Of a stretch of DNA of 64,000 nucleotides, positions 48,857-58,622 are shown one piece after another. How positions within the stretch are numbered: the first letter of the stretch is position 1; each line of letters starts with the position of its first letter. The notes under the pieces were generated by a model. The model was given only the letters and a program-made list of their open reading frames with translations, did not search any database and had not been told where the DNA came from. Location: the sequence record MW812341.1, one strand, 5' to 3'. The translations under genes were made by a program, and so were the position numbers.

Positions 48857-51040
48857 GTGGATGCACGTTCGATAAATGATATTACGTGGATTGACGGCCT
48901 GTTCGGCGGTATGAAACTTCCCCGTGATACCCGTTTCGTGAACTTGCGTACGTATTCCAATGCGGTGCTCAGTTTCTCGGATACCACCGTGGGCGGGAAC
49001 ATCGCACTGAATGCGCCACCGCAATTCACGTTCTTTGCTGACCCACCAATTACCGGCGCAATCGCTGTCCCGGAAAATGCTCCGGGTGGTGATCAAAACG
49101 CGGGTTGGTTTGAATCGTTCCGTGGACAAGGGTCGTATCGTCAAGGTGCGTACTACTGGGAGTCCATTGAACAGAACGCCTTCTATCTGCACTGTCGCTT
49201 TGGTAAGCCGCGCTACCTCGGGGTAGCTGCGTTCTTTGCGAACATGTATGATTCCAAATTGGCTTATCTGGCACGTACCGGTGACTATCCGGGCGTGGTG
49301 CGTGAACTGGCAGGTTGGACTGCGGCTGCTGCTATCTGGGCAACCGTAGGGACTGCGGCCTTTGCGCTTATCCTGATTACGCCACGTATCATGAAAATGG
49401 TACTGAACAAAGAAGCTTCTCGTTATTACTACGTCAAGCCAGCAATGCATTTGTACTTACGTGCAGTGCAGAACATCGTGAACACCCAGTTGCTGTACCG
49501 TCGTTTGGTACCGACGGGTATCCTCGGTATGTTTAACTTACCGAAGGACATCAACGATAAAGACAACAAATACAACGCAAGCAAGAAAGATGTATACGGG
49601 ATGTTGCCGGACATCTGGAAAGCAAACGGTGAGTTTGACGTCTACCGCATGATTAACCGTTATAACGTGTTGGCGAATTACCAGGCCGCCCGTATTGCAG
49701 AGATTCAGGCTGACTCAGCGAACGAAGCTGAGATGAACCAGAAAATCCAGCAATACTACAAGCAGATGTTGTACAGCGATGTGCACTTGACGCGTGCTGG
49801 GCAGATGGAAATCTCGTTGTCGCGTTTGGAGGATGTGGCGAAGACAGCGGATGGCTATAAGGCCAAGGTTGACCCGGACACCATGGAAGCCGCTGCGGTT
49901 GACCAGATGACCGGTGCGTTTGTTGCAGCAGATCAGGCCGGTGGTGCAGAGAAGAACTTTACTTCCGAAGCCGAGGTGCAGCAAGCACAGCTGAAAGCAC
50001 AGATGGCCAGTGATGCTGCCAACAACGGAGACGAGAACGGTGAAACGACTGCTCGCGATATAGGGAAGATTCAGAACTGGATGAATGAGGGACAGAAGGA
50101 AAACTTCTCTACCATGTTCGGTGACTTCTCTAAAATCGGCGAGGGCGTGGGCGAACAGTTTAAATCCGAATTGGAGAACGGTTCGCAGTGGATTACCTGG
50201 AAGATTAACGGTCGTGACACCACGTCCCGTAGCTTTAGCAACAACACCAAGGAACCGGAAATCTCAGGCACGGTTAACGCCATGACTCAGAAAGCGCGTT
50301 CTCTGGAGGTTAACCTCTCCGGTGGTGTGACAGGCTTTGATGCGGTCGATGGTTTAATTACCGGACTGAAGTCTGCCTTTACAGGCGCATTAGACTTCCT
50401 TCATCTGTCGGGTATCGTATCACTGTACAACTCCTCGGTGATTGACTTCCCGGAAGTGTGGGATTCTTCTGACACCTCAGGCGATGACATTACCTTCACC
50501 ATTCCATTGCGTTGCTGGTCGGGCGGTGACCTGGATGTGTTCCAGGATTTGATTCTGCCACTTTCCTTCTGGTTAGCGGCGGTATGTCCACTGGCTACTG
50601 GTAAACAGTCCTTCACACACCCGTTCTATCTCGAGGCGTATTCTCGCGGTCGTTACTCCATGCGTAATGCCATGGTGACCAACGTGGGCTTTAACTTCGG
50701 TGTGGGTGGTATGGGTTGGCGTGTAGACGGTGTGCCGTTGTCTTGTGATATCAGCGTAACCATCCGTGACATGTCTCGCGTGATGTATATGCCAATCGTA
50801 ACCGACCAGTCTGTATTCGATGACGATAACAAGTTCTCTGAATTCATGGCCGTGTTGGGTGCAGCAACCTTGCACGAACGTACGAGCGGTATCGCACGTA
50901 TGGCAATGAATGCAAACTCCCAGTACCAATCATGGAAGTCTGCGTTCTCGCAGGGTGCGATTATGAACAAGTTCTTCGACTTGCCACCTGCGCGTGTTGC
51001 CGCGAATATCTTCACGGCGTTCAGCGGTTCCCAGCGTTAA
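48857..51040 (+). CDS. virion/baseplate-associated protein (phiKZ gp182-like by synteny)
   Basis: 727 aa directly after tape measure, GAGG RBS, GTG start. Confidence 0.75.
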   Translation: MDARSINDITWIDGLFGGMKLPRDTRFVNLRTYSNAVLSFSDTTVGGNIALNAPPQFTFFADPPITGAIAVPENAPGGDQNAGWFESFRGQGSYRQGAYYWESIEQNAFYLHCRFGKPRYLGVAAFFANMYDSKLAYLARTGDYPGVVRELAGWTAAAAIWATVGTAAFALILITPRIMKMVLNKEASRYYYVKPAMHLYLRAVQNIVNTQLLYRRLVPTGILGMFNLPKDINDKDNKYNASKKDVYGMLPDIWKANGEFDVYRMINRYNVLANYQAARIAEIQADSANEAEMNQKIQQYYKQMLYSDVHLTRAGQMEISLSRLEDVAKTADGYKAKVDPDTMEAAAVDQMTGAFVAADQAGGAEKNFTSEAEVQQAQLKAQMASDAANNGDENGETTARDIGKIQNWMNEGQKENFSTMFGDFSKIGEGVGEQFKSELENGSQWITWKINGRDTTSRSFSNNTKEPEISGTVNAMTQKARSLEVNLSGGVTGFDAVDGLITGLKSAFTGALDFLHLSGIVSLYNSSVIDFPEVWDSSDTSGDDITFTIPLRCWSGGDLDVFQDLILPLSFWLAAVCPLATGKQSFTHPFYLEAYSRGRYSMRNAMVTNVGFNFGVGGMGWRVDGVPLSCDISVTIRDMSRVMYMPIVTDQSVFDDDNKFSEFMAVLGAATLHERTSGIARMAMNANSQYQSWKSAFSQGAIMNKFFDLPPARVAANIFTAFSGSQR

Positions 51041-51081: not shown

Positions 51082-51149
51082 AATTTAACCCTAAGTCAAA
51101 TTGGGGTTAATATGCCGTCATGGTGATGGCCTTAATAGAGGGAATTAAG

Positions 51150-51710
51150 ATGAGCCTTTTTGGAAAAACGGCGAAAGAACTGGTTTATGATCTACTCGTT
51201 TCAAAGAACCCACTCTTGGCCGAAAAGAATGTGACTATCGATAAGTTAATCTTCGCAACTCCGAGCCATATTGGTGGTACGGATGAAACCCCAGAAGAGA
51301 AATACGGTCGCTTGAACACATCTTTGAAAGTAAGCGGCGATACAGATAAGAATGTAATCGGTGATGTTCAATTAACATACCGCAGGATATTCTTAGACCA
51401 CCTTTTCGATGGTATGGTGTTATCTGTTGACGGCACTGGCGCGACTACCACGTTAGACCTCTTGCCTAAAATCACAACGAAGTACGGTATCGTTATTCAG
51501 CCCAGCGAAGTAAAGAGTCAACCGGTTAGCGGTAGTAAGGCTACGGTGACAATGAACGGAAGCTCGTTAGCGTGGATAGGTAACTTCGATGTATTTCTTA
51601 CAGACATGCCCGCCGACACCACCGACCTTACTGCAATGGCTAAAGTCACTCAGCTGGAAGGTCTTGTTTATAGCCTTGATGGTATAGGGTCTGATACACC
51701 CACTGAATAA
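51150..51710 (+). CDS. small virion structural protein (about 186 aa)
   Basis: RLNTSL.V, VQLTYRRIFL, TTLDLLPKI..KYG, SLAWIG pattern typical of jumbo-phage tail-associated repeat domains; GAGGG RBS. Confidence 0.65.
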   Translation: MSLFGKTAKELVYDLLVSKNPLLAEKNVTIDKLIFATPSHIGGTDETPEEKYGRLNTSLKVSGDTDKNVIGDVQLTYRRIFLDHLFDGMVLSVDGTGATTTLDLLPKITTKYGIVIQPSEVKSQPVSGSKATVTMNGSSLAWIGNFDVFLTDMPADTTDLTAMAKVTQLEGLVYSLDGIGSDTPTE

Positions 51711-53131: not shown

Positions 53132-54010
53132 TTAAAGGGAACCCTGGGCAGCTTTCTGCTCAGCGGTCATATCGGCTTCTTTCACAAAGATACCATCGGC
53201 ATTCAGGAAACCTTTACGGTCTTTGATTTCATCCCATGCCAGAGAGAAGCATTGTTCTAGCGTCATGTCGTACGCACTGGCCAATGCATTGAAATATGCC
53301 AGAGACTTGGTCAGCAGTTCAGTGAACTCCAGCTCAATGTCAGCTTCGGAACGTGGCTCAACGTTTTCGAATTCGCGATTGAAGCCTTGAACTTCGTACG
53401 CTAAGTCGAACATCTTCGTTGTGTTCAGACGCAACTTGTGGAATAAGTAATGCGAGTCACCCATTGGGCTCGGCATACCACGCACGGCAGTTACCGCAGC
53501 AGATATTTCAATCGCGTGACCACGGGTCAATGCCAATACGTTGGTTAATACCACCAGAGCATCGCCCAGGCCGTCCATAATGAGACGATGTTTGGTTTTA
53601 CTGATACCGGTAGCCGCTTCACCATCTTCTTCGTAGAACTTGGTACACTGCGTCTGCCACTTACCGTTAGACAGAATACCACGCGCTTTCGACCAGCCGA
53701 TAACATTCTCAATACATTCCGGAATGTTAAACAGACGGATACGTCGCGGGTGTGTGGTGGTGCCCTTGTATTCAACACCTTCCAACGTCATCGGGATTTC
53801 CAGATCGTCGATATCAATTGCACTGGTACCGGTTTTAACTTTACCTTCGACACGGTACGCGCCGGTCTCAGTGTTCTGCGCCATAGCGTACAGATTCTCG
53901 AACTGAATCTGGTGCCCGATGGCCGCAATGCGGTAGTTTACCTGACGCACCAGTTCCGGAGTAATCACAACGATGTTGTAAGGAATCTGAATAGCAAAAG
54001 TCTCGCCCAT
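53132..54010 (-). CDS. MazG-like nucleoside triphosphate pyrophosphohydrolase with N-terminal extension
   Basis: W..ARGI, KFYEEDGE, DGLGDALVVL, CFSLAWDEIKDRKG..FVKE motifs. Confidence 0.8.
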   Translation of the reverse strand: MGETFAIQIPYNIVVITPELVRQVNYRIAAIGHQIQFENLYAMAQNTETGAYRVEGKVKTGTSAIDIDDLEIPMTLEGVEYKGTTTHPRRIRLFNIPECIENVIGWSKARGILSNGKWQTQCTKFYEEDGEAATGISKTKHRLIMDGLGDALVVLTNVLALTRGHAIEISAAVTAVRGMPSPMGDSHYLFHKLRLNTTKMFDLAYEVQGFNREFENVEPRSEADIELEFTELLTKSLAYFNALASAYDMTLEQCFSLAWDEIKDRKGFLNADGIFVKEADMTAEQKAAQGSL

Positions 54011-54037
54011 GATTTGTTAATCCTTGTTAGAAAAAAA

Positions 54038-54071
54038 AGAAAAGAAAAAGGGGGTGTCCATAAGGACACCC
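54038..54071 (-). terminator. intrinsic terminator
   Basis: GGGTGTCC-ATAA-GGACACCC with U-rich tail on -. Confidence 0.75.
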
Positions 54072-54078
54072 ACATACG

Positions 54079-54288
54079 TTAAATTTTGCAGGCACCGCTA
54101 GGACAACTAGAGTCATCCAATGCAGCGTCCACGCCACCTTCTACGGTGACGCCATCTAAACCTAAATGGCTAAGGTCGAATTCATCCAGCGTGTTCTGCT
54201 GTTTGATTAATTCTTGCGTACCGGCTGGGGTTAAACCCCGACCGATATCACCTTCGACCAAATACCGCGATAAATCTTTTCCAGACAT
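54079..54288 (-). CDS. 69-aa acidic protein ending in NrdA-like redox tail CPSGACKI
   Basis: GAGG RBS, own stop and terminator; C-terminus DDSSCPSGACKI versus E. coli NrdA QDDGCESGACKI. Confidence 0.8.
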   Translation of the reverse strand: MSGKDLSRYLVEGDIGRGLTPAGTQELIKQQNTLDEFDLSHLGLDGVTVEGGVDAALDDSSCPSGACKI

Positions 54289-54295
54289 AACTACC

Positions 54296-54739
54296 TCAGT
54301 TCAACATGTAAATCACGACGTTATCGTCGACCATACCTGCCAGTCGCTTATAGAAAGTATTGTACTTGTTGTGGTAGAAATAGATTCCTGAATCCACAAC
54401 AAACACTTTCTTCCATTTACGCGTGTTAACGAACTGATGGAAACTTTTCCCTGGTAGGAATGTGGCCTTCGGGCCATTAGGGAAACGCTGTGCGTATTCA
54501 TCTTTGATGAGGCCACACAGACGCCCCTGCGCCAATACCAGCGTGTCTTCTGTTAACTGTTTGTACATCCAGGAAGTCATTCCTTTCTGTCGCCCAGCAC
54601 CCAGGTGAATCGTACGGAATTCACCCAGGTAGATTTCACGGGTTGGTGCCATGTTTCGTACAGCCTGGCTCGAGATACCGTCCATGCTCTTGGTCAGCTC
54701 TTGCACCACAATATCGTAATTGATTAGGGTCTTAGACAC
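54296..54739 (-). CDS. hypothetical protein, degenerate P-loop-like (about 147 aa)
   Basis: TIHLGAGRQKGMT and VFVVD resemble Walker A/B without the catalytic Lys; GTG start 54739. Confidence 0.7.
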   Translation of the reverse strand: MSKTLINYDIVVQELTKSMDGISSQAVRNMAPTREIYLGEFRTIHLGAGRQKGMTSWMYKQLTEDTLVLAQGRLCGLIKDEYAQRFPNGPKATFLPGKSFHQFVNTRKWKKVFVVDSGIYFYHNKYNTFYKRLAGMVDDNVVIYMLN

Positions 54740-54749
54740 TGTATTTACC

Positions 54750-55583
54750 TTATTCGTCGATGTTAGGGAGATCAGTAGCCGGTGCAACTTCACCTGCTGC
54801 TTCTTTTTCCGCCTGTTGGCGTTCTACTTCTTCGTTCAGGCCAGCAATCAGTTTTTCCTGAATTGCCTTCCAGTCCGGGTTCAGCCACAGCTGAATAGAA
54901 TGGTTGCCGTAAACTTCGAAGACTTCTTTCCAGCCTTCTACCGGAGTATCAGACAGGGTTCCTTTACGGCAGATATATGCCGCTTCACTGAAGAACTCTT
55001 CCAGCTCGTTTGCTTCGAGCAGGTCGACCATATGCCAAATTGGCGTCAGTTCGTGATCAACAATGATTTTGTAATCGTACTCAACCGTCTCACCGGTCGG
55101 GGAGAAGTTCTTATCGTCGTCACCTTCGAAGGTGATAAACATCGGCAGGCGGTCTGGATGCGATTCGATGTTAACCCAGCCACGCCACATTTCTTTACCA
55201 GAGCTTGCCGCTTCTGCTGGAATGCGTTCCATTACGTCCATGTGGACGATGACCGCTTCTTCTGTCCAACCGTACTGCTGACACAACAGCTTCGTCAGCG
55301 TAGCCTTACGCTCAGACAGGTCAACGCCTTCATTCACGCGATACACTGGCACCTGCATCTTACGCGGGTCGTCGTAGGTACGGCCTTCAATCTGACGGAA
55401 GTCCTGACCTACGGTAATCTGACCTTCGTAAGTGGTATCACCCAGCACTACCGAGTCAACCTTATTGGTACCCAGCAGTTCGTGGAGGTGTGCCAGGTCA
55501 CGAGCACCCACAGCGCCGTAGAAATAAGGAGCCATCGGAGAAGAGTAAGCGCAATCGGTGAAGAAGAACAGTTTGTTTGTCAT
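54750..55583 (-). CDS. hypothetical acidic protein (277 aa)
   Basis: ORF; highly expressed codon bias. Confidence 0.85.
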   Translation of the reverse strand: MTNKLFFFTDCAYSSPMAPYFYGAVGARDLAHLHELLGTNKVDSVVLGDTTYEGQITVGQDFRQIEGRTYDDPRKMQVPVYRVNEGVDLSERKATLTKLLCQQYGWTEEAVIVHMDVMERIPAEAASSGKEMWRGWVNIESHPDRLPMFITFEGDDDKNFSPTGETVEYDYKIIVDHELTPIWHMVDLLEANELEEFFSEAAYICRKGTLSDTPVEGWKEVFEVYGNHSIQLWLNPDWKAIQEKLIAGLNEEVERQQAEKEAAGEVAPATDLPNIDE

Positions 55584-56045
55584 TTAGGTTTCCACGTATG
55601 TGATTTTAAAGGTGCCCGGCTTATCGGTTGGGGTAATGAACAACCCCATCTCATAAACCAGGTCGATATCGTCGCCAATGTACAATCGTGCATTGTCATG
55701 TACCAAGTGGTAATCCTCATCATTCAGAATACCAGCAAGACTACCGACGTGCGTGTACGGCACGGCTTTCAAAATGCTTTCCAGGTTCGCACGGGTTACT
55801 TCGATTTCCAATAACCGCGTACGTCCGGCGTAACAGGAGTTCATGAAACCATAGGGATCGGAGAAGAAGTAAACACAACCTTCGAATGTCCGACTTACGC
55901 TACTGACACGGTCAAGTATCAGCGCCCACCAGTACATATCAGTTGGCGGTACTGTAAATACTTTCGGTTCCCCGCCCTGAGGGTCAGGAATCCAAATTGC
56001 AGCATCCTCCAACTTCTTAGGTTGGAACTTCAATACGTCACCCAT
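55584..56045 (-). CDS. hypothetical protein (153 aa)
   Basis: ORF with AAGGAG RBS. Confidence 0.8.
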   Translation of the reverse strand: MGDVLKFQPKKLEDAAIWIPDPQGGEPKVFTVPPTDMYWWALILDRVSSVSRTFEGCVYFFSDPYGFMNSCYAGRTRLLEIEVTRANLESILKAVPYTHVGSLAGILNDEDYHLVHDNARLYIGDDIDLVYEMGLFITPTDKPGTFKITYVET

Positions 56046-56054
56046 GGGGTCTCC

Positions 56055-57278
56055 TTAAATAGCAACTGGTGCTTTTATCGCAGGATGTGGATCGTAGCCC
56101 GTAAGCTCAAAGTCTTCGAACTTATAATCGAAGATAGAGTCCGGCTTACGCAGAATTCTCAACTTCGGTAAAGGTCGTGGGTCACGAGACAGCTGAAGTT
56201 TAACCTGCTCTTCGTGATTGCTGTAGATGTGCACATCACCGCCCGTCCATACGAAATCACCGACAGTCATGTTGACCTGTTGGGCTACCATGTGAATCAA
56301 CAGTGCGTAGGATGCGATGTTAAACGGGACGCCTAAGAACATGTCAGCGCTACGCTGATACAGCTGACAGGAAAGCTCACGCTTAGGCATATCGTTAGCA
56401 TCAAGCCAGGCTTCGGCATCGGCTTGCGTAAGCCCAGAACCCGCCCAGTCTTCGTAGAAGTCAGCATGGTCGTGAACATAAAGCAGTCGTTCTTCTACAG
56501 ACAGCTCACGGGTGTAGAACTGGAAGAAGGTGTGACATGGGGCTAATGCCATTTCATCCAATTCACCCACGTTCCAGGCACTGACGATAATACGACGGTT
56601 GTCCGGATCGTTACGCAGCTGATCAATAACCGTACTGATTTGGTCATAGCTTTTCGTCAACACGGTGCAAACACCATAGTCCGGTTCAGAGATACCGGTA
56701 AGACGAACCTTATAACCTTTGTCAATGAGTCTCTTAATCTCATCGGTATCCGCGTTATTGACGATGCGTGTGTCTTGCCAGTCACGCCACTGCTTACCGT
56801 AGACCGGGCCGAGTTCCCCCTGTACTGCTATTTTGCGGAGCCCAATCCGTGGAACGTTTTGAGCATCGAGTACCGCCATCGACTCTTCATCATCGCCAGC
56901 TAACAGACCCGCTTCCCACTCTTTATACCAATCGGTGGTTTCACCGTTGATAGAGCTGCGGTCACGTAAGAAGGCGGTACGTTCAGCCAACGTATACGTG
57001 CATTGAACGGTGTGGAGTTCATCACGAGCCCATTCGTCCCAGATAGTGACGTTGTTGGCATTCAGATACTCGATGTTGGTATCGCCCTGGAGGAACCATA
57101 ACAGTTCATGGATGATTGAACGCAGATGAACTTTCTTGGTCGTCACCAGAGGAAAACTGTCTTTCAGGCTAAAGCGCATCTGTGCGCCGAGCACAGACGT
57201 GGTGCCCGTACCGGTACGGTCTTTCTTTACATGTCCGTCGCGACGGACTTGATTTAGGAGGATGAGATACTGGTGCAT
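56055..57278 (-). CDS. thyA: thymidylate synthase with large insertions
   Basis: [62 protein letters not shown]. Confidence 0.97.
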
Positions 57279-58183
57279 ATTTTATTTTGATCCTTACTGA
57301 GTGTGTCTAATAACCACGCCAGGTCTTCATTGGCATTAACATTGATTTCGCCCCCAATCTTTGACACCACGAATTGTGGAGAACGCTCGAACAGCAGATG
57401 CCGCCATTTATCGGCCCCACGAATATATTTATCCAGTAGGTTGTCCAGACGATCTTCCATCTTACGCTTAACGGTTTCGAGGTGATGTATTCCAACAATC
57501 TCACCAATCATACGTTGGCGAAGTTCGTCGAACTGTCCCCGGAGCGCCACGGTGATGTACTGAGAAATGGCGAAGCCCGAAGGCTCGACTTTCACAGGAG
57601 GGTTCCCGTGTGTATCAACGAACGTCATTGAGTGTTCTGGTCTTGGGCCGAACTGACCGAATTCATTGAGCTGCCCATCCTTCTTAATGATGGAAGTCAC
57701 AGCGTTCACCACACAACGGTCAAGATAGAAACCGCCTTTGCGGGCCACGGCTTTTAACGCCTCGATAGACTGGCCTACCGACTCTAACGCCACCGCCCGA
57801 GACAAACGTGTACCGGCTACGGAATCCCAGTGACCCAAATCTGACAACGCACGTACGGTTTCTGCAACCAGCAGTTTCACTTGTACCGGTCGAGACTGCG
57901 AATCGAACCGCCCAGTAGTATCTCTTTGGAATTGATACTCAAACTCTTCGGCAGTGATGCCCGTGAACGCACAGCAGGTGAATAGGTTCGCCAACAGATT
58001 ACCCGCAGCCGCAGCAACATCTAACCCGTTCATCTTCTGCACACCCTCGGCCAGTGTGCCGAGGTAACGATACATTTTCAAACACTGCTGGTCGAGTGTT
58101 CCGTGACGATACACCAACGCGTTTTGGTTCCACGCGTTTAACATCTGGAACTGGGGTAAGGTCGGATGAATTTTATCCGGCAT
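57254..58183 (-). CDS. hypothetical protein with degenerate MazG-like helices (309 aa)
   Basis: [17 protein letters not shown]...[11 protein letters not shown] pattern lacking the acidic metal ligands. Confidence 0.75.
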
Positions 58184-58622
58184 GTTCAATCTCCTCAAGT
58201 GCGTCTTCCAACTGGACAGCAGCGTGGGCGTAGCTGATCATGTACGACAGTCCGTTATCTTCATTAGAGCGGTACACCAGGATACTGATTACGCCGTTGT
58301 CTAATAAGGTTGGTGCCATACCCTGCGACACAGGACGCTCAGCGGCCCTAGACAGCGCCCCAAGCATACGCCAGCTACTAACACGGCTAGTGAACTCACC
58401 GTGCTTGAGCAGCGCCTTACCGGTCGAGCGTGGGATGTGGAAGGCAAACATCTGACCGCACTTCTCCACGTTCGCATTCAGATTGATTTCATTCGTAACA
58501 ACAATGCGGGCTTTCTCACCCAGACGCTTCACCAACACCTGCCAGTGATGGTTAAAGGTAGAGTCGATACGTTTGCCGTTTAACAGCAAGCCAACAGATG
58601 GGGAAAACGTCAAGTTATTCAT
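58173..58622 (-). CDS. hypothetical protein (149 aa)
   Basis: Start at ATG 58622 (upstream extension crosses a terminator). Confidence 0.75.
   Translation of the reverse strand: MNNLTFSPSVGLLLNGKRIDSTFNHHWQVLVKRLGEKARIVVTNEINLNANVEKCGQMFAFHIPRSTGKALLKHGEFTSRVSSWRMLGALSRAAERPVSQGMAPTLLDNGVISILVYRSNEDNGLSYMISYAHAAVQLEDALEEIEHAG

What the first reader, a model, noticed from the sequence alone, without database searches (positions are those of the whole stretch)
54079..54288. Stand-alone mini-protein mimicking the redox-shuttle tail of host ribonucleotide reductase NrdA
SEEN: an independent 69-codon gene (GAGG RBS, own stop, downstream terminator) ends ...AALDDSSCPSGACKI. The upstream gene is not an nrdA, and no nrdA body is in this window. 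KNOWN: E. coli NrdA ends ...IQDDGCESGACKI. That Cys pair on a flexible acidic tail carries electrons from thioredoxin/glutaredoxin to the active-site disulfide. INFERENCE: the phage expresses this tail in trans, either to boost host class Ia RNR turnover (more dNTPs for a jumbo genome) or to compete for or redirect Trx/Grx. It sits in a nucleotide-metabolism neighbourhood (MazG-like, thyA, CYTH).
Basis: partly seen in the sequence, partly recalled or inferred. Interest (0 to 1): 0.8.

Follow-up and report, generated by a model that had tools for sequence, protein, structure and literature searches.

The report
Phage copy of RNR redox tail
A giant phage that has no ribonucleotide reductase of its own carries a tiny, conserved gene whose product ends in a near-exact copy of the cysteine tail that recharges the host's reductase, so it may be how the phage taps or tunes the host's supply of DNA building blocks.

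Summary
Window 54079..54288, minus strand, is a 69-codon gene of Erwinia phage pEa_SNUABM_9 with a GAGG ribosome site, its own stop and a strong terminator. A profile of 19 relatives searched against all PDB sequences returns only class Ia RNR alpha subunits, matched end to end at their C-termini. The phage has no RNR of any class, and neither does SPN3US, so this is not an nrdA remnant.

New facts:
- The gene belongs to an unnamed family found throughout SPN3US-like jumbo phages. Both cysteines and three other tail positions are invariant in 33 of 33 distinct tails, with synonymous codon variation.
- In four phage lineages the tail is fused to the C-terminus of the conserved 277-aa protein encoded two genes upstream.
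- Stand-alone homologues of 42-53 aa sit in Neisseriaceae chromosomes, mostly between iscS and iscU.

Best reading: a disordered dithiol tail acting in trans. It works with the 277-aa protein and plugs into the host thioredoxin/glutaredoxin-to-NrdA electron relay. Boosting is more plausible than blocking, because the phage depends on host RNR. The function is inferred, not shown. I found no published description.

The parts
54079..54288 (-). Mini-protein gene, 69 codons plus stop TAA (pEaSNUABM9_00125).
   Evidence: ORF list and sequence; GenBank CDS. It has 62 tblastn-matching phage records, one of them spurious and all the others from SPN3US-like phages of Enterobacterales. PHROGs 14561, 24014 and 38753, all of unknown function. 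No Pfam or NCBIfam family. The AF2 model has no stable fold: pLDDT 53, pTM 0.18.
54082..54129 (-). NrdA-like tail, residues 54-69, with the Cys pair at residues 62 and 67 (C-x4-C) followed by K-I at the C-terminus.
   Evidence: Only NrdA C-termini are returned from the PDB. Positions -8 C, -5 G, -4 A, -3 C and -2 K are invariant in 33 of 33 distinct tails. Each uses 2-4 synonymous codons.
54130..54183 (-). Second conserved block, residues 36-53: acidic and hydrophobic, ending in a Gly-Gly. It is shared with the bacterial minis and is absent from E. coli NrdA.
   Evidence: Alignments A1 and A5. Neisseriaceae minis carry the same block. Position -18 G is invariant in 33 of 33 tails. The NrdA match does not extend into this block.
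54294..54297 (-). GAGG ribosome-binding site, six bases before the ATG, overlapping the stop of the upstream gene.
   Evidence: Read directly from the sequence.
54030..54071 (-). Intrinsic terminator (stem-loop 54071..54052, then a T-run) that closes the transcription unit after the mini gene.
   Evidence: sequence.
54296..54739 (-). Upstream neighbour, 147 aa from the annotated start. It is a small protein of phrog_2586 with P-loop-like and Walker-B-like motifs; the Walker-B-like acidic pair is degenerate in this phage. The gene is present in some relatives and absent in others.
   Evidence: It is absent where the tail is fused to the 277-aa protein.
54750..55583 (-). 277-aa protein of phrog_10453, the 'body' that carries the tail as its own C-terminus in four relatives.
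   Evidence: Fusions L030:3086-4150, P0021, P0022 and P0023. Synteny in L063. No invariant cysteine in the family. AF2 pLDDT 59, and no fold match in the PDB.
55584..56045 (-). 153-aa protein of phrog_9376, a conserved member of the same gene string; function unknown.
56055..57278 (-). Thymidylate synthase, 407 aa, with a large insertion relative to the 266-position Pfam model.
   Evidence: Pfam PF00303, E = 5.8e-111.
53132..54010 (-). MazG-like nucleotide pyrophosphohydrolase, the next gene downstream after the terminator.
   Evidence: phrog_7855, E = 2e-109; weak Pfam MazG hit.
57254..58198 (-). Second, distant MazG-like protein, upstream of thyA.
   Evidence: phrog_10269, plus weak hits to MazG PHROGs.

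Best explanation
The gene makes a short, acidic, intrinsically disordered protein. Its last 12-16 residues are a working copy of the C-terminal dithiol tail of class Ia ribonucleotide reductase alpha (NrdA) of enterobacterial hosts.

Shown:
- the copy and its conservation;
- the phage's lack of any RNR;
- the fusion of the tail to the phrog_10453 protein in relatives.

Inferred:
- The tail is kept reduced by host thioredoxin or glutaredoxin, as the NrdA tail is.
- It delivers, or competes for delivery of, electrons to the oxidised active-site cysteine pair of host NrdA.
- The phrog_10453 protein acts as the docking body, covalently in the fused forms and non-covalently in the split forms such as this one.
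- The net effect is to tune host RNR turnover during infection.

I think extra reduced tails raising turnover is more likely than blocking, for two reasons. These phages must get their deoxynucleotides through the host enzyme. And every member keeps both cysteines, which means a cycling dithiol rather than a single trapping thiol.
For: - Tail identity with NrdA, anchored at the C-terminus, and no other PDB protein returned.
- One of the returned hits is the NrdA tail peptide solved in a mixed disulfide with glutaredoxin 1 (1qfn_B).
- Class I tails carry a redox-active cysteine pair that is reduced by thioredoxin, glutaredoxin or NrdH and that re-reduces the active site (PMC6187632; PMC9669993).
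- Both cysteines, G, A and K are invariant in 33 of 33 distinct tails despite synonymous codon change. The N-terminal part varies freely in length and sequence.
- No RNR in pEa_SNUABM_9: tblastn with NrdA, NrdB, NrdD and NrdG, and a Pfam scan of all 43 ORFs of at least 450 aa. None in SPN3US by tblastn, and none in its annotation.
- No redoxin-like gene in the phage, by CxxC motif plus Pfam.
- Always among deoxynucleotide genes: thyA and MazG-like here, and directly after dUTPase in an unrelated 154-kb phage contig.
- Four independent ORFs fuse the tail to phrog_10453 with otherwise identical synteny.
- The AF2 model shows no stable fold, as expected of a flexible tail.
- Own ribosome site and terminator.
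Against: - No functional, expression or binding data exist for any member. No paper mentions it.
- The Erwinia NrdA tail itself was not fetched. The comparison is with E. coli NrdA and with PDB entries.
- The phrog_10453 body has no recognisable fold or conserved cysteine, so its partner is unknown.
- Bacterial homologues sit in the isc operon of Neisseriaceae, beside a full-length NrdA that has its own tail. This points to a role not limited to, or not even centred on, NrdA.
- A second conserved block has no counterpart in NrdA.
- A free peptide competes with a tethered tail at a disadvantage, so a boost is not assured.
Confidence: 0.45

Rival explanations
1. Decoy or inhibitor. The free tail occupies the NrdA active-site channel, or soaks up thioredoxin/glutaredoxin, and so slows host RNR or diverts reducing power. 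This would resemble yeast Sml1, which blocks regeneration of R1.
For: It rests on the same tail mimicry. Small disordered proteins that interfere with the R1 tail-dependent regeneration step are known: Sml1, in PMC6382339 citing Zhang et al. 2007. The mini is disordered and acidic.
Against: The phage has no RNR and no other route to new deoxynucleotides, so blocking the host enzyme would starve a 247-kb genome. Both cysteines are kept in 33 of 33 tails, which a pure blocker does not need. The gene sits among genes that make, not deplete, DNA precursors.
Confidence: 0.15
2. It is the detached redox tail of a phage protein, not a mimic aimed at NrdA. On this reading phrog_10453 is an enzyme or adaptor of unknown chemistry that needs a thioredoxin- or glutaredoxin-rechargeable dithiol arm. 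The resemblance to NrdA reflects only a shared way of engaging redoxins.
For: The tail is the natural C-terminus of phrog_10453 in L030, P0021, P0022 and P0023. The window's 277-aa protein ends in a short acidic motif resembling the one that precedes the tail in many relatives, as if a gene had been split. Bacterial minis live away from nrdAB.
Against: phrog_10453 has no invariant cysteine for a tail to reduce. It has no Pfam, PDB-sequence or fold match. Derbicusvirus and Alexandravirus phages, and L025, keep the mini without a clear phrog_10453 or phrog_2586 neighbour.
Confidence: 0.2
3. A thiol peptide of iron-sulfur cluster biogenesis. Because the bacterial homologues sit between iscS and iscU, the family may carry or reduce persulfide sulfur, or regulate IscS. 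The phage copy would then serve the phage's iron-sulfur enzymes.
For: Nearly all of the 16 confirmed bacterial loci that carry informative flanks show the mini between iscS and iscU in Neisseria and Eikenella. In Kingella it lies next to iscU, after nrdD-nrdG. The phages encode two radical-SAM proteins that need 4Fe-4S clusters.
Against: No isc gene lies near the phage minis, and the radical-SAM genes lie about 60 kb away on the circular genome. Neisseria leonii and another bacterium carry the mini outside any isc context. The tail matches NrdA and nothing in the ISC machinery.
Confidence: 0.1
4. Precursor of a ribosomally made, modified peptide. Two UniRef entries call the Neisseria homologue an 'FxLD family lantipeptide'.
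For: The name given by a source. The layout is an acidic, leader-like front followed by a cysteine-bearing end. Radical-SAM genes exist in the phage.
Against: - No NCBIfam or Pfam model matches any of the eight members scanned in NCBIfam, seven of them also in Pfam.
- Several members (Parshik, L032, P0015) have no Ser or Thr at all in the last 19 residues, so no lanthionine can form, yet the cysteines stay invariant.
- No lanthipeptide synthetase family appears among the phage ORFs of at least 450 aa.
- No maturase lies next to the gene in phages or in Neisseria.
- No SPASM domain is found in the radical-SAM proteins.
Confidence: 0.04
5. A decaying 3' remnant of a disrupted nrdA, or a chance ORF.
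For: The only NrdA-like stretch in the genome is this gene.
Against: - There is no nrdA body anywhere in the genome.
- The gene has its own start, ribosome site and terminator.
- It is kept as a separate gene in at least five phage genera, with purifying selection on the tail.
- The sequence before the tail is unlike NrdA.
- In relatives it is fused to a non-RNR protein.
Confidence: 0.01

Closest known systems
C-terminal redox tail of class Ia RNR alpha (E. coli NrdA residues about 747-761; PDB 1QFN shows the tail peptide bound to glutaredoxin 1)
   Same: The last eleven residues have the same layout: two acidic residues, then C-x4-C with identical G-A-C-K-I at the very C-terminus. Both are acidic and disordered.
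   Different: Here the tail is a separate 69-aa gene product, or is fused to an unrelated phage protein, in a genome with no RNR. It carries an extra conserved block that NrdA lacks.
Yeast Sml1 (with Spd1, Hug1 and Dif1, from my own knowledge): small disordered regulators of the RNR large subunit
   Same: A small, disordered protein thought to act at the step where the R1 C-terminal tail regenerates the active site (PMC6382339).
   Different: There is no sequence relation: Pfam finds nothing. Sml1 is an inhibitor and does not carry the cysteine pair. This protein carries the pair, and its host-dependent phage needs RNR to be active.
Split class II RNR NrdJa/NrdJb of Pseudomonas (from my own knowledge; not tested here)
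   Same: The cysteine-bearing C-terminal part of an RNR is made as a separate polypeptide that works with the catalytic body in trans.
   Different: There both halves belong to one organism and one enzyme. Here only the tail is encoded, by a virus, and the body would be the host's enzyme.
Phage- or operon-encoded RNR reductants (T4 NrdC, NrdH, and Grx fused to NrdB)
   Same: Accessory genes that improve electron supply to RNR. PMC6187632 shows that fusing the reductant to the enzyme works.
   Different: Those are thioredoxin-fold proteins with CxxC that reduce the tail. This is a copy of the tail itself, with no fold and C-x4-C spacing.
Neisseriaceae 42-53 aa hypothetical proteins between iscS and iscU (for example WP_003674561.1 and WP_003782432.1, as listed)
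   Same: True homologues. They share the conserved block and an identical tail layout, they stand alone, and they are unnamed.
   Different: They are chromosomal and lie in an iron-sulfur operon, in bacteria that have a complete NrdA with its own tail. They are shorter and lack the phage-type N-terminal part.

Membership tests
Class Ia RNR alpha subunit (NrdA) | Catalytic ten-stranded barrel (Pfam Ribonuc_red_lgC / lgN) | tested here: not met
   No Pfam hit for the 69-aa protein. No NrdA-like sequence elsewhere in the genome.
Class Ia RNR alpha subunit (NrdA) | Disordered C-terminal tail with a redox cysteine pair at the extreme C-terminus | tested here: met
   C-terminus to C-terminus match to NrdA chains only. 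Same C-x4-C-K-I ending as E. coli NrdA.
nrdA pseudogene remnant | Flanking NrdA-derived sequence, with loss of start signals and of constraint | tested here: not met
   Own ATG, ribosome site and terminator. The upstream sequence is unlike NrdA. Purifying selection on the tail.
Thioredoxin / glutaredoxin / NrdH redoxins | Thioredoxin fold with a CxxC active site | tested here: not met
   C-x4-C spacing. No Pfam family. No stable predicted fold.
FxLD-family class I lanthipeptide precursor | Match to the curated precursor model | tested here: not met
   The NCBIfam scan of eight members gives no hit, and the Pfam scan of seven of them gives none either. The name appears only in two UniRef entries.
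FxLD-family class I lanthipeptide precursor | Ser/Thr plus Cys in the core, and LanB/LanC (or LanM) genes nearby | tested here: not met
   Some members have no Ser or Thr in the last 19 residues. No synthetase family among the phage ORFs of at least 450 aa. None beside the Neisseria genes. LanC-size ORFs (<450 aa) of the phage were not scanned.
Sml1-type RNR inhibitor | Sequence membership in the Sml1 family | tested here: not met
   The Pfam scan returns no family for the protein.
Sml1-type RNR inhibitor | Binds the RNR large subunit and blocks its regeneration | not testable with these tools
New family proposed here: stand-alone NrdA-tail-like mini-proteins (PHROGs 14561, 24014 and 38753, plus the Neisseriaceae minis) | Length of 42-97 aa (or fused to phrog_10453); acidic; a conserved Gly-containing block followed by the invariant C, G, A, C, K positions at -8, -5, -4, -3 and -2 | tested here: met

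The most novel reading that the evidence does not exclude
Stand-alone 'redox-shuttle tails' are a previously unrecognised class of portable protein module. On this reading the module is a thioredoxin/glutaredoxin-rechargeable dithiol arm that can be encoded apart from the enzyme it serves. Jumbo phages without RNR would use it, with a docking protein (phrog_10453), to drive the host's class Ia RNR beyond its normal turnover. Neisseriaceae would use a chromosomal version in trans, for example for RNR or for persulfide reduction in iron-sulfur assembly.
Probability: 0.3. Interest if true: 0.9.

Novelty: categorically new. Interest (0 to 1): 0.8.

Why it matters
If the reading is right, it shows a way of taking over host metabolism that has not been described. 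The virus brings neither its own enzyme nor a classical inhibitor. It brings only the small mobile arm that limits the enzyme's recycling.

It would make directly testable an old question in RNR enzymology: can the re-reduction step be served in trans, and does it limit flux in vivo?

It would also explain how giant phages with 240-kb genomes and no RNR obtain enough deoxynucleotides.

It gives a name and a hypothesis to an unannotated gene present in hundreds of Neisseria genomes, in the middle of the isc operon.

Finally, the fusion and split forms give a natural pointer to a second unknown protein (phrog_10453) in the same process.

Tried and rejected
- **DNA-level capture from the host.** The last 102 bases of the gene have no blastn match in 5,426 E. 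coli genomes, so there is no sign of recent transfer.
- **Likeness of the N-terminal half to the NrdB C-terminal tail.** I noticed a Y-L-V string and an acidic D-L-S string. BLASTP finds nothing, the A5 profile finds no PDB chain, and the shuffle test gives p = 0.27. For the Neisseria mini against E. coli NrdB, p = 0.036, post hoc. Rejected as unsupported.
- **Fold of the 277-aa body.** AF2 with six sequences gives pLDDT 59. Foldseek against the PDB gives nothing better than E = 0.1 and TM about 0.1. A profile against PDB sequences also gives nothing.
- **The upstream phrog_2586 gene as the obligate partner.** Rejected. It is missing where the tail is fused, and the genes at that position in Derbicusvirus and Alexandravirus do not align with it.
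- **A phage redoxin.** No ORF with a redoxin-type CxxC motif has a Pfam match.
- **Homology of the Neisseria or Kingella neighbours (202 aa, 151 aa) to the phage neighbours.** None found by tblastn.
- **Literature.** Searches on SPN3US gp232-234, on RNR tail mimicry and on tails acting in trans found no description. A search for the tail letters returned only surnames.
- **Word-indexed protein search.** It found only close relatives. The exhaustive profile search found just seven true mini clusters.
- **Not done.** The Erwinia NrdA tail was not fetched. RNR absence was checked in two phages only.

- the letters of a nine-residue C-terminal peptide of an animal virus's RNR small subunit;
- a phage terminase Walker-A string;
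- a lantibiotic leader peptide.

The CxxC pattern came from general knowledge. My notes contain short motif shorthand for a conserved block of the family.

Full report
**What the window is.** The region is 100% identical to Erwinia phage pEa_SNUABM_9 (MW812341.1, 247,273 bp, genus Machinavirus), an SPN3US-like jumbo phage of Erwinia amylovora. Window position equals record position minus 62,000. Every gene of the record is annotated 'hypothetical protein'.

**The observation.**
- On the minus strand, 54288..54079 is a 69-codon ORF with ATG start and TAA stop. It is annotated as pEaSNUABM9_00125.
- GAGG lies six bases before the ATG and overlaps the TGA stop of the upstream gene.
- Directly after the stop lies the best terminator-like site of the surrounding 6.5 kb: an 8-bp stem with 6 G-C pairs, a 4-base loop and a T-run, at 54071..54052.
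- The protein ends ...DDSSCPSGACKI. E. coli NrdA, fetched as L018 from NC_000913.3, ends ...DDGCESGACKI.

**Is the likeness more than chance?**
- I aligned 19 relatives (A1) and searched the profile against all 177,635 distinct PDB sequences. All 14 hits up to E = 10 are class Ia RNR alpha subunits, and each is matched from the profile's last positions to the chain's last residues.
- The best E-value is 0.018. One hit is 1qfn_B, the NrdA C-terminal peptide solved with glutaredoxin 1.
- The Neisseria homologue gives the same list on its own.
- A shuffle test of the last 25 residues against the NrdA tail gives p = 0.0004.
- A plain C-x4-C-x2 ending is not rare (8 of 4574 frames). The string GACK, however, occurs once in all six frames of this phage and once in SPN3US, in this gene both times.

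**Not a remnant, and no RNR in the phage.**
- I fetched the rest of the genome in pieces. tblastn with E. coli NrdA and NrdB finds nothing; the best NrdA 'hit' is the mini gene itself at E = 3.7.
- Kingella NrdD and NrdG also find nothing.
- A Pfam scan of all 43 ORFs of at least 450 aa returns 15 families, none of them an RNR of any class.
- SPN3US, fetched the same way, likewise has no NrdA or NrdB. Its annotation lists dihydrofolate reductase, thymidylate kinase and thymidylate synthase, but no RNR.
- No ORF with a redoxin-type CxxC motif has a Pfam match.
- These phages therefore depend on the host enzyme and the host reductants.

**The family.**
- tblastn finds the gene in 62 phage records. 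One ssRNA-phage match is spurious; all the others are SPN3US-like phages of Erwinia, Salmonella, Escherichia, Cronobacter and Proteus, in the genera Machinavirus, Seoulvirus, Erskinevirus, Derbicusvirus and Alexandravirus. SPN3US gp234 is the orthologue.
- The N-terminal part varies from nothing to about 60 residues. The last 30 or so residues are conserved.
- In 26 distinct phage tails and 7 distinct bacterial tails, positions -8 (C), -5 (G), -4 (A), -3 (C), -2 (K) and -18 (G) are invariant. The last residue is I in 31 and L in 2.
- The invariant residues use two to four synonymous codons each, so selection acts on the protein.
- The family matches three PHROGs of unknown function and no Pfam or NCBIfam model. 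An exhaustive profile search of 1.84 billion representatives finds only seven true clusters.
- AF2 gives no stable fold: pLDDT 53, pTM 0.18, from a shallow alignment.

**Neighbourhood.** On the minus strand the order is:
1. MazG-like (57254..58198)
2. thyA (56055..57278)
3. phrog_9376 (55584..56045)
4. phrog_10453, 277 aa (54750..55583)
5. phrog_2586, 147 aa (54296..54739)
6. the mini gene, then the terminator
7. MazG-like (53132..54010)

The same string recurs in the relatives. In an unrelated 154-kb viral contig the mini follows a dUTPase gene directly.

**Fusions.**
- In a 237-kb uncultivated phage (L030) the tail is the C-terminus of a 355-aa ORF whose body is phrog_10453.
- Three more proteins from other contigs have the same build: P0021 (299 aa), P0022 (298 aa, a cluster of 27 members) and P0023 (310 aa).
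- In L063 the order is thyA, 153 aa, fusion, MazG-like. That is the window's order without the phrog_2586 gene and without a separate mini gene.
- The window's 277-aa protein itself ends in a short acidic motif like the one that precedes the tail in many relatives.
- This gene-fusion evidence ties the tail to phrog_10453.
- That protein family has no invariant cysteine, no Pfam or PDB-sequence match and no fold match from a mediocre model.
- phrog_2586 looks like a small P-loop protein and is dispensable for the pairing.

**Bacterial homologues.**
- A scan of one genome per bacterial species gave more than 599 pattern matches. I presume these are NrdA tails; they were not checked one by one.
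- It also gave 16 confirmed relatives, all in Neisseriaceae.
- These are stand-alone ORFs of 42-45 aa with the same conserved block and tail.
- In Neisseria and Eikenella they lie between iscS and iscU in iscR-iscS-(variable insert)-mini-iscU...hscB. In Kingella denitrificans the order is nrdD-nrdG-(151 aa)-mini-iscU.
- One 'viral' IMG/VR contig (L028) is in fact this Neisseria locus.
- Other bacterial members lie elsewhere: Neisseria leonii next to a universal stress protein, and one unidentified bacterium as an orphan gene.
- Sources call them hypothetical proteins. Two UniRef entries say 'FxLD family lantipeptide'.

**Interpretation.**
[quoted passage not shown] It re-reduces the active-site pair and is itself reduced by thioredoxin, glutaredoxin or NrdH (PMC6187632; PMC9669993).
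- A separately encoded copy of that tail, in phages that have neither RNR nor redoxin, is most simply read as a part that plugs into the host relay.
- The fusions say that it normally acts as the arm of phrog_10453, which I infer to be the docking part.
- Direction is inferred only. I favour support of turnover over blockade, because the phage needs host RNR for a 247-kb genome and because both cysteines are always kept.
- The blockade model has a precedent in Sml1 (PMC6382339) and is not excluded.
- The Neisseria data warn that the module may serve other thiol chemistry. The isc position suggests persulfide or cluster work, and the Kingella position suggests class III RNR, which in Neisseria bacilliformis can use thioredoxin (cited in PMC9669993).
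- The lanthipeptide reading fails on three counts: absence of Ser/Thr in several members, absence of model hits, and absence of synthetases.

**Novelty.** I found no curated family, no name beyond 'hypothetical' and no paper. The nearest known things are the NrdA tail itself, Sml1-type regulators, split NrdJa/NrdJb and phage redoxins. Each differs in a defining respect, so I rate it as a new kind of thing, with function still to be shown.

Noticed in passing
window 56055..57278 (-): The thymidylate synthase is 407 aa against a 266-position Pfam model, so it carries about 140 extra residues. SPN3US thyA is 338 aa, and relatives range from 342 to 369 aa. The insertion is therefore variable.
   Followed up: no
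window 54296..54739 (-), and alignment A4: phrog_2586 is a small protein with a P-loop-like motif and a Walker-B-like motif. In this phage and in ChrisDB the Walker-B-like acidic pair is degenerate. The gene is present or absent between otherwise syntenic phages, like an inserted or lost cassette that splits phrog_10453 from its tail.
   Followed up: partly
window 54750..54790 (-), the C-terminus of the 277-aa protein: The 277-aa protein ends in a short acidic Asp-Leu-Pro...Asp-Glu motif that resembles the motif just before the conserved block in many minis. It looks like a duplicated junction left by a gene split.
   Followed up: partly
L022:2019-4254 (record 176019..178254, outside the window); SPN3US gp163/gp164: Two adjacent radical-SAM genes (301 and 446 aa; Radical_SAM plus Fer4_12, no SPASM hit) are conserved between pEa_SNUABM_9 and SPN3US. 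Their function is unknown.
   Followed up: partly
L069:8063-8227 (SPN3US gp238); window homologue 48857..51040 (+): There is a 58-residue local match (41% identity, E = 2e-5 in a 44-kb search) between SPN3US gp238 and Kingella class III RNR NrdD residues 370-425. The window homologue has no NRDD Pfam hit, and pEa_SNUABM_9 gives no such match. Probably chance, but unexplained.
   Followed up: partly
L036-L051 (Neisseriaceae), for example L047:2950-3078 and L038:2977-3108: An unannotated or 'hypothetical' 42-45 aa gene with an NrdA-like tail sits between iscS and iscU in Neisseria, Eikenella and Kingella, often after a variable inserted gene (202 aa in N. subflava, 151 aa in Kingella). In Kingella it follows nrdD-nrdG.
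   Followed up: partly
L028 (IMGVR_UViG_2541047228_000006): This contig, filed as viral in IMG/VR, carries iscR-iscS-mini-iscU-hscB at 91-99% identity to Neisseria. At this locus, then, it is bacterial chromosome rather than phage.
   Followed up: yes
P0010 (2415 aa) and P0016 (847 aa): Two long proteins match the Gly-rich conserved block of the mini profile many times over (21 and 6 stretches). They look like repeat proteins rather than relatives.
   Followed up: no
window 51120..51710 (+), and two further large ORFs of the phage: Three proteins of the phage match DUF7941. One lies just beyond the cluster, on the other strand.
   Followed up: no
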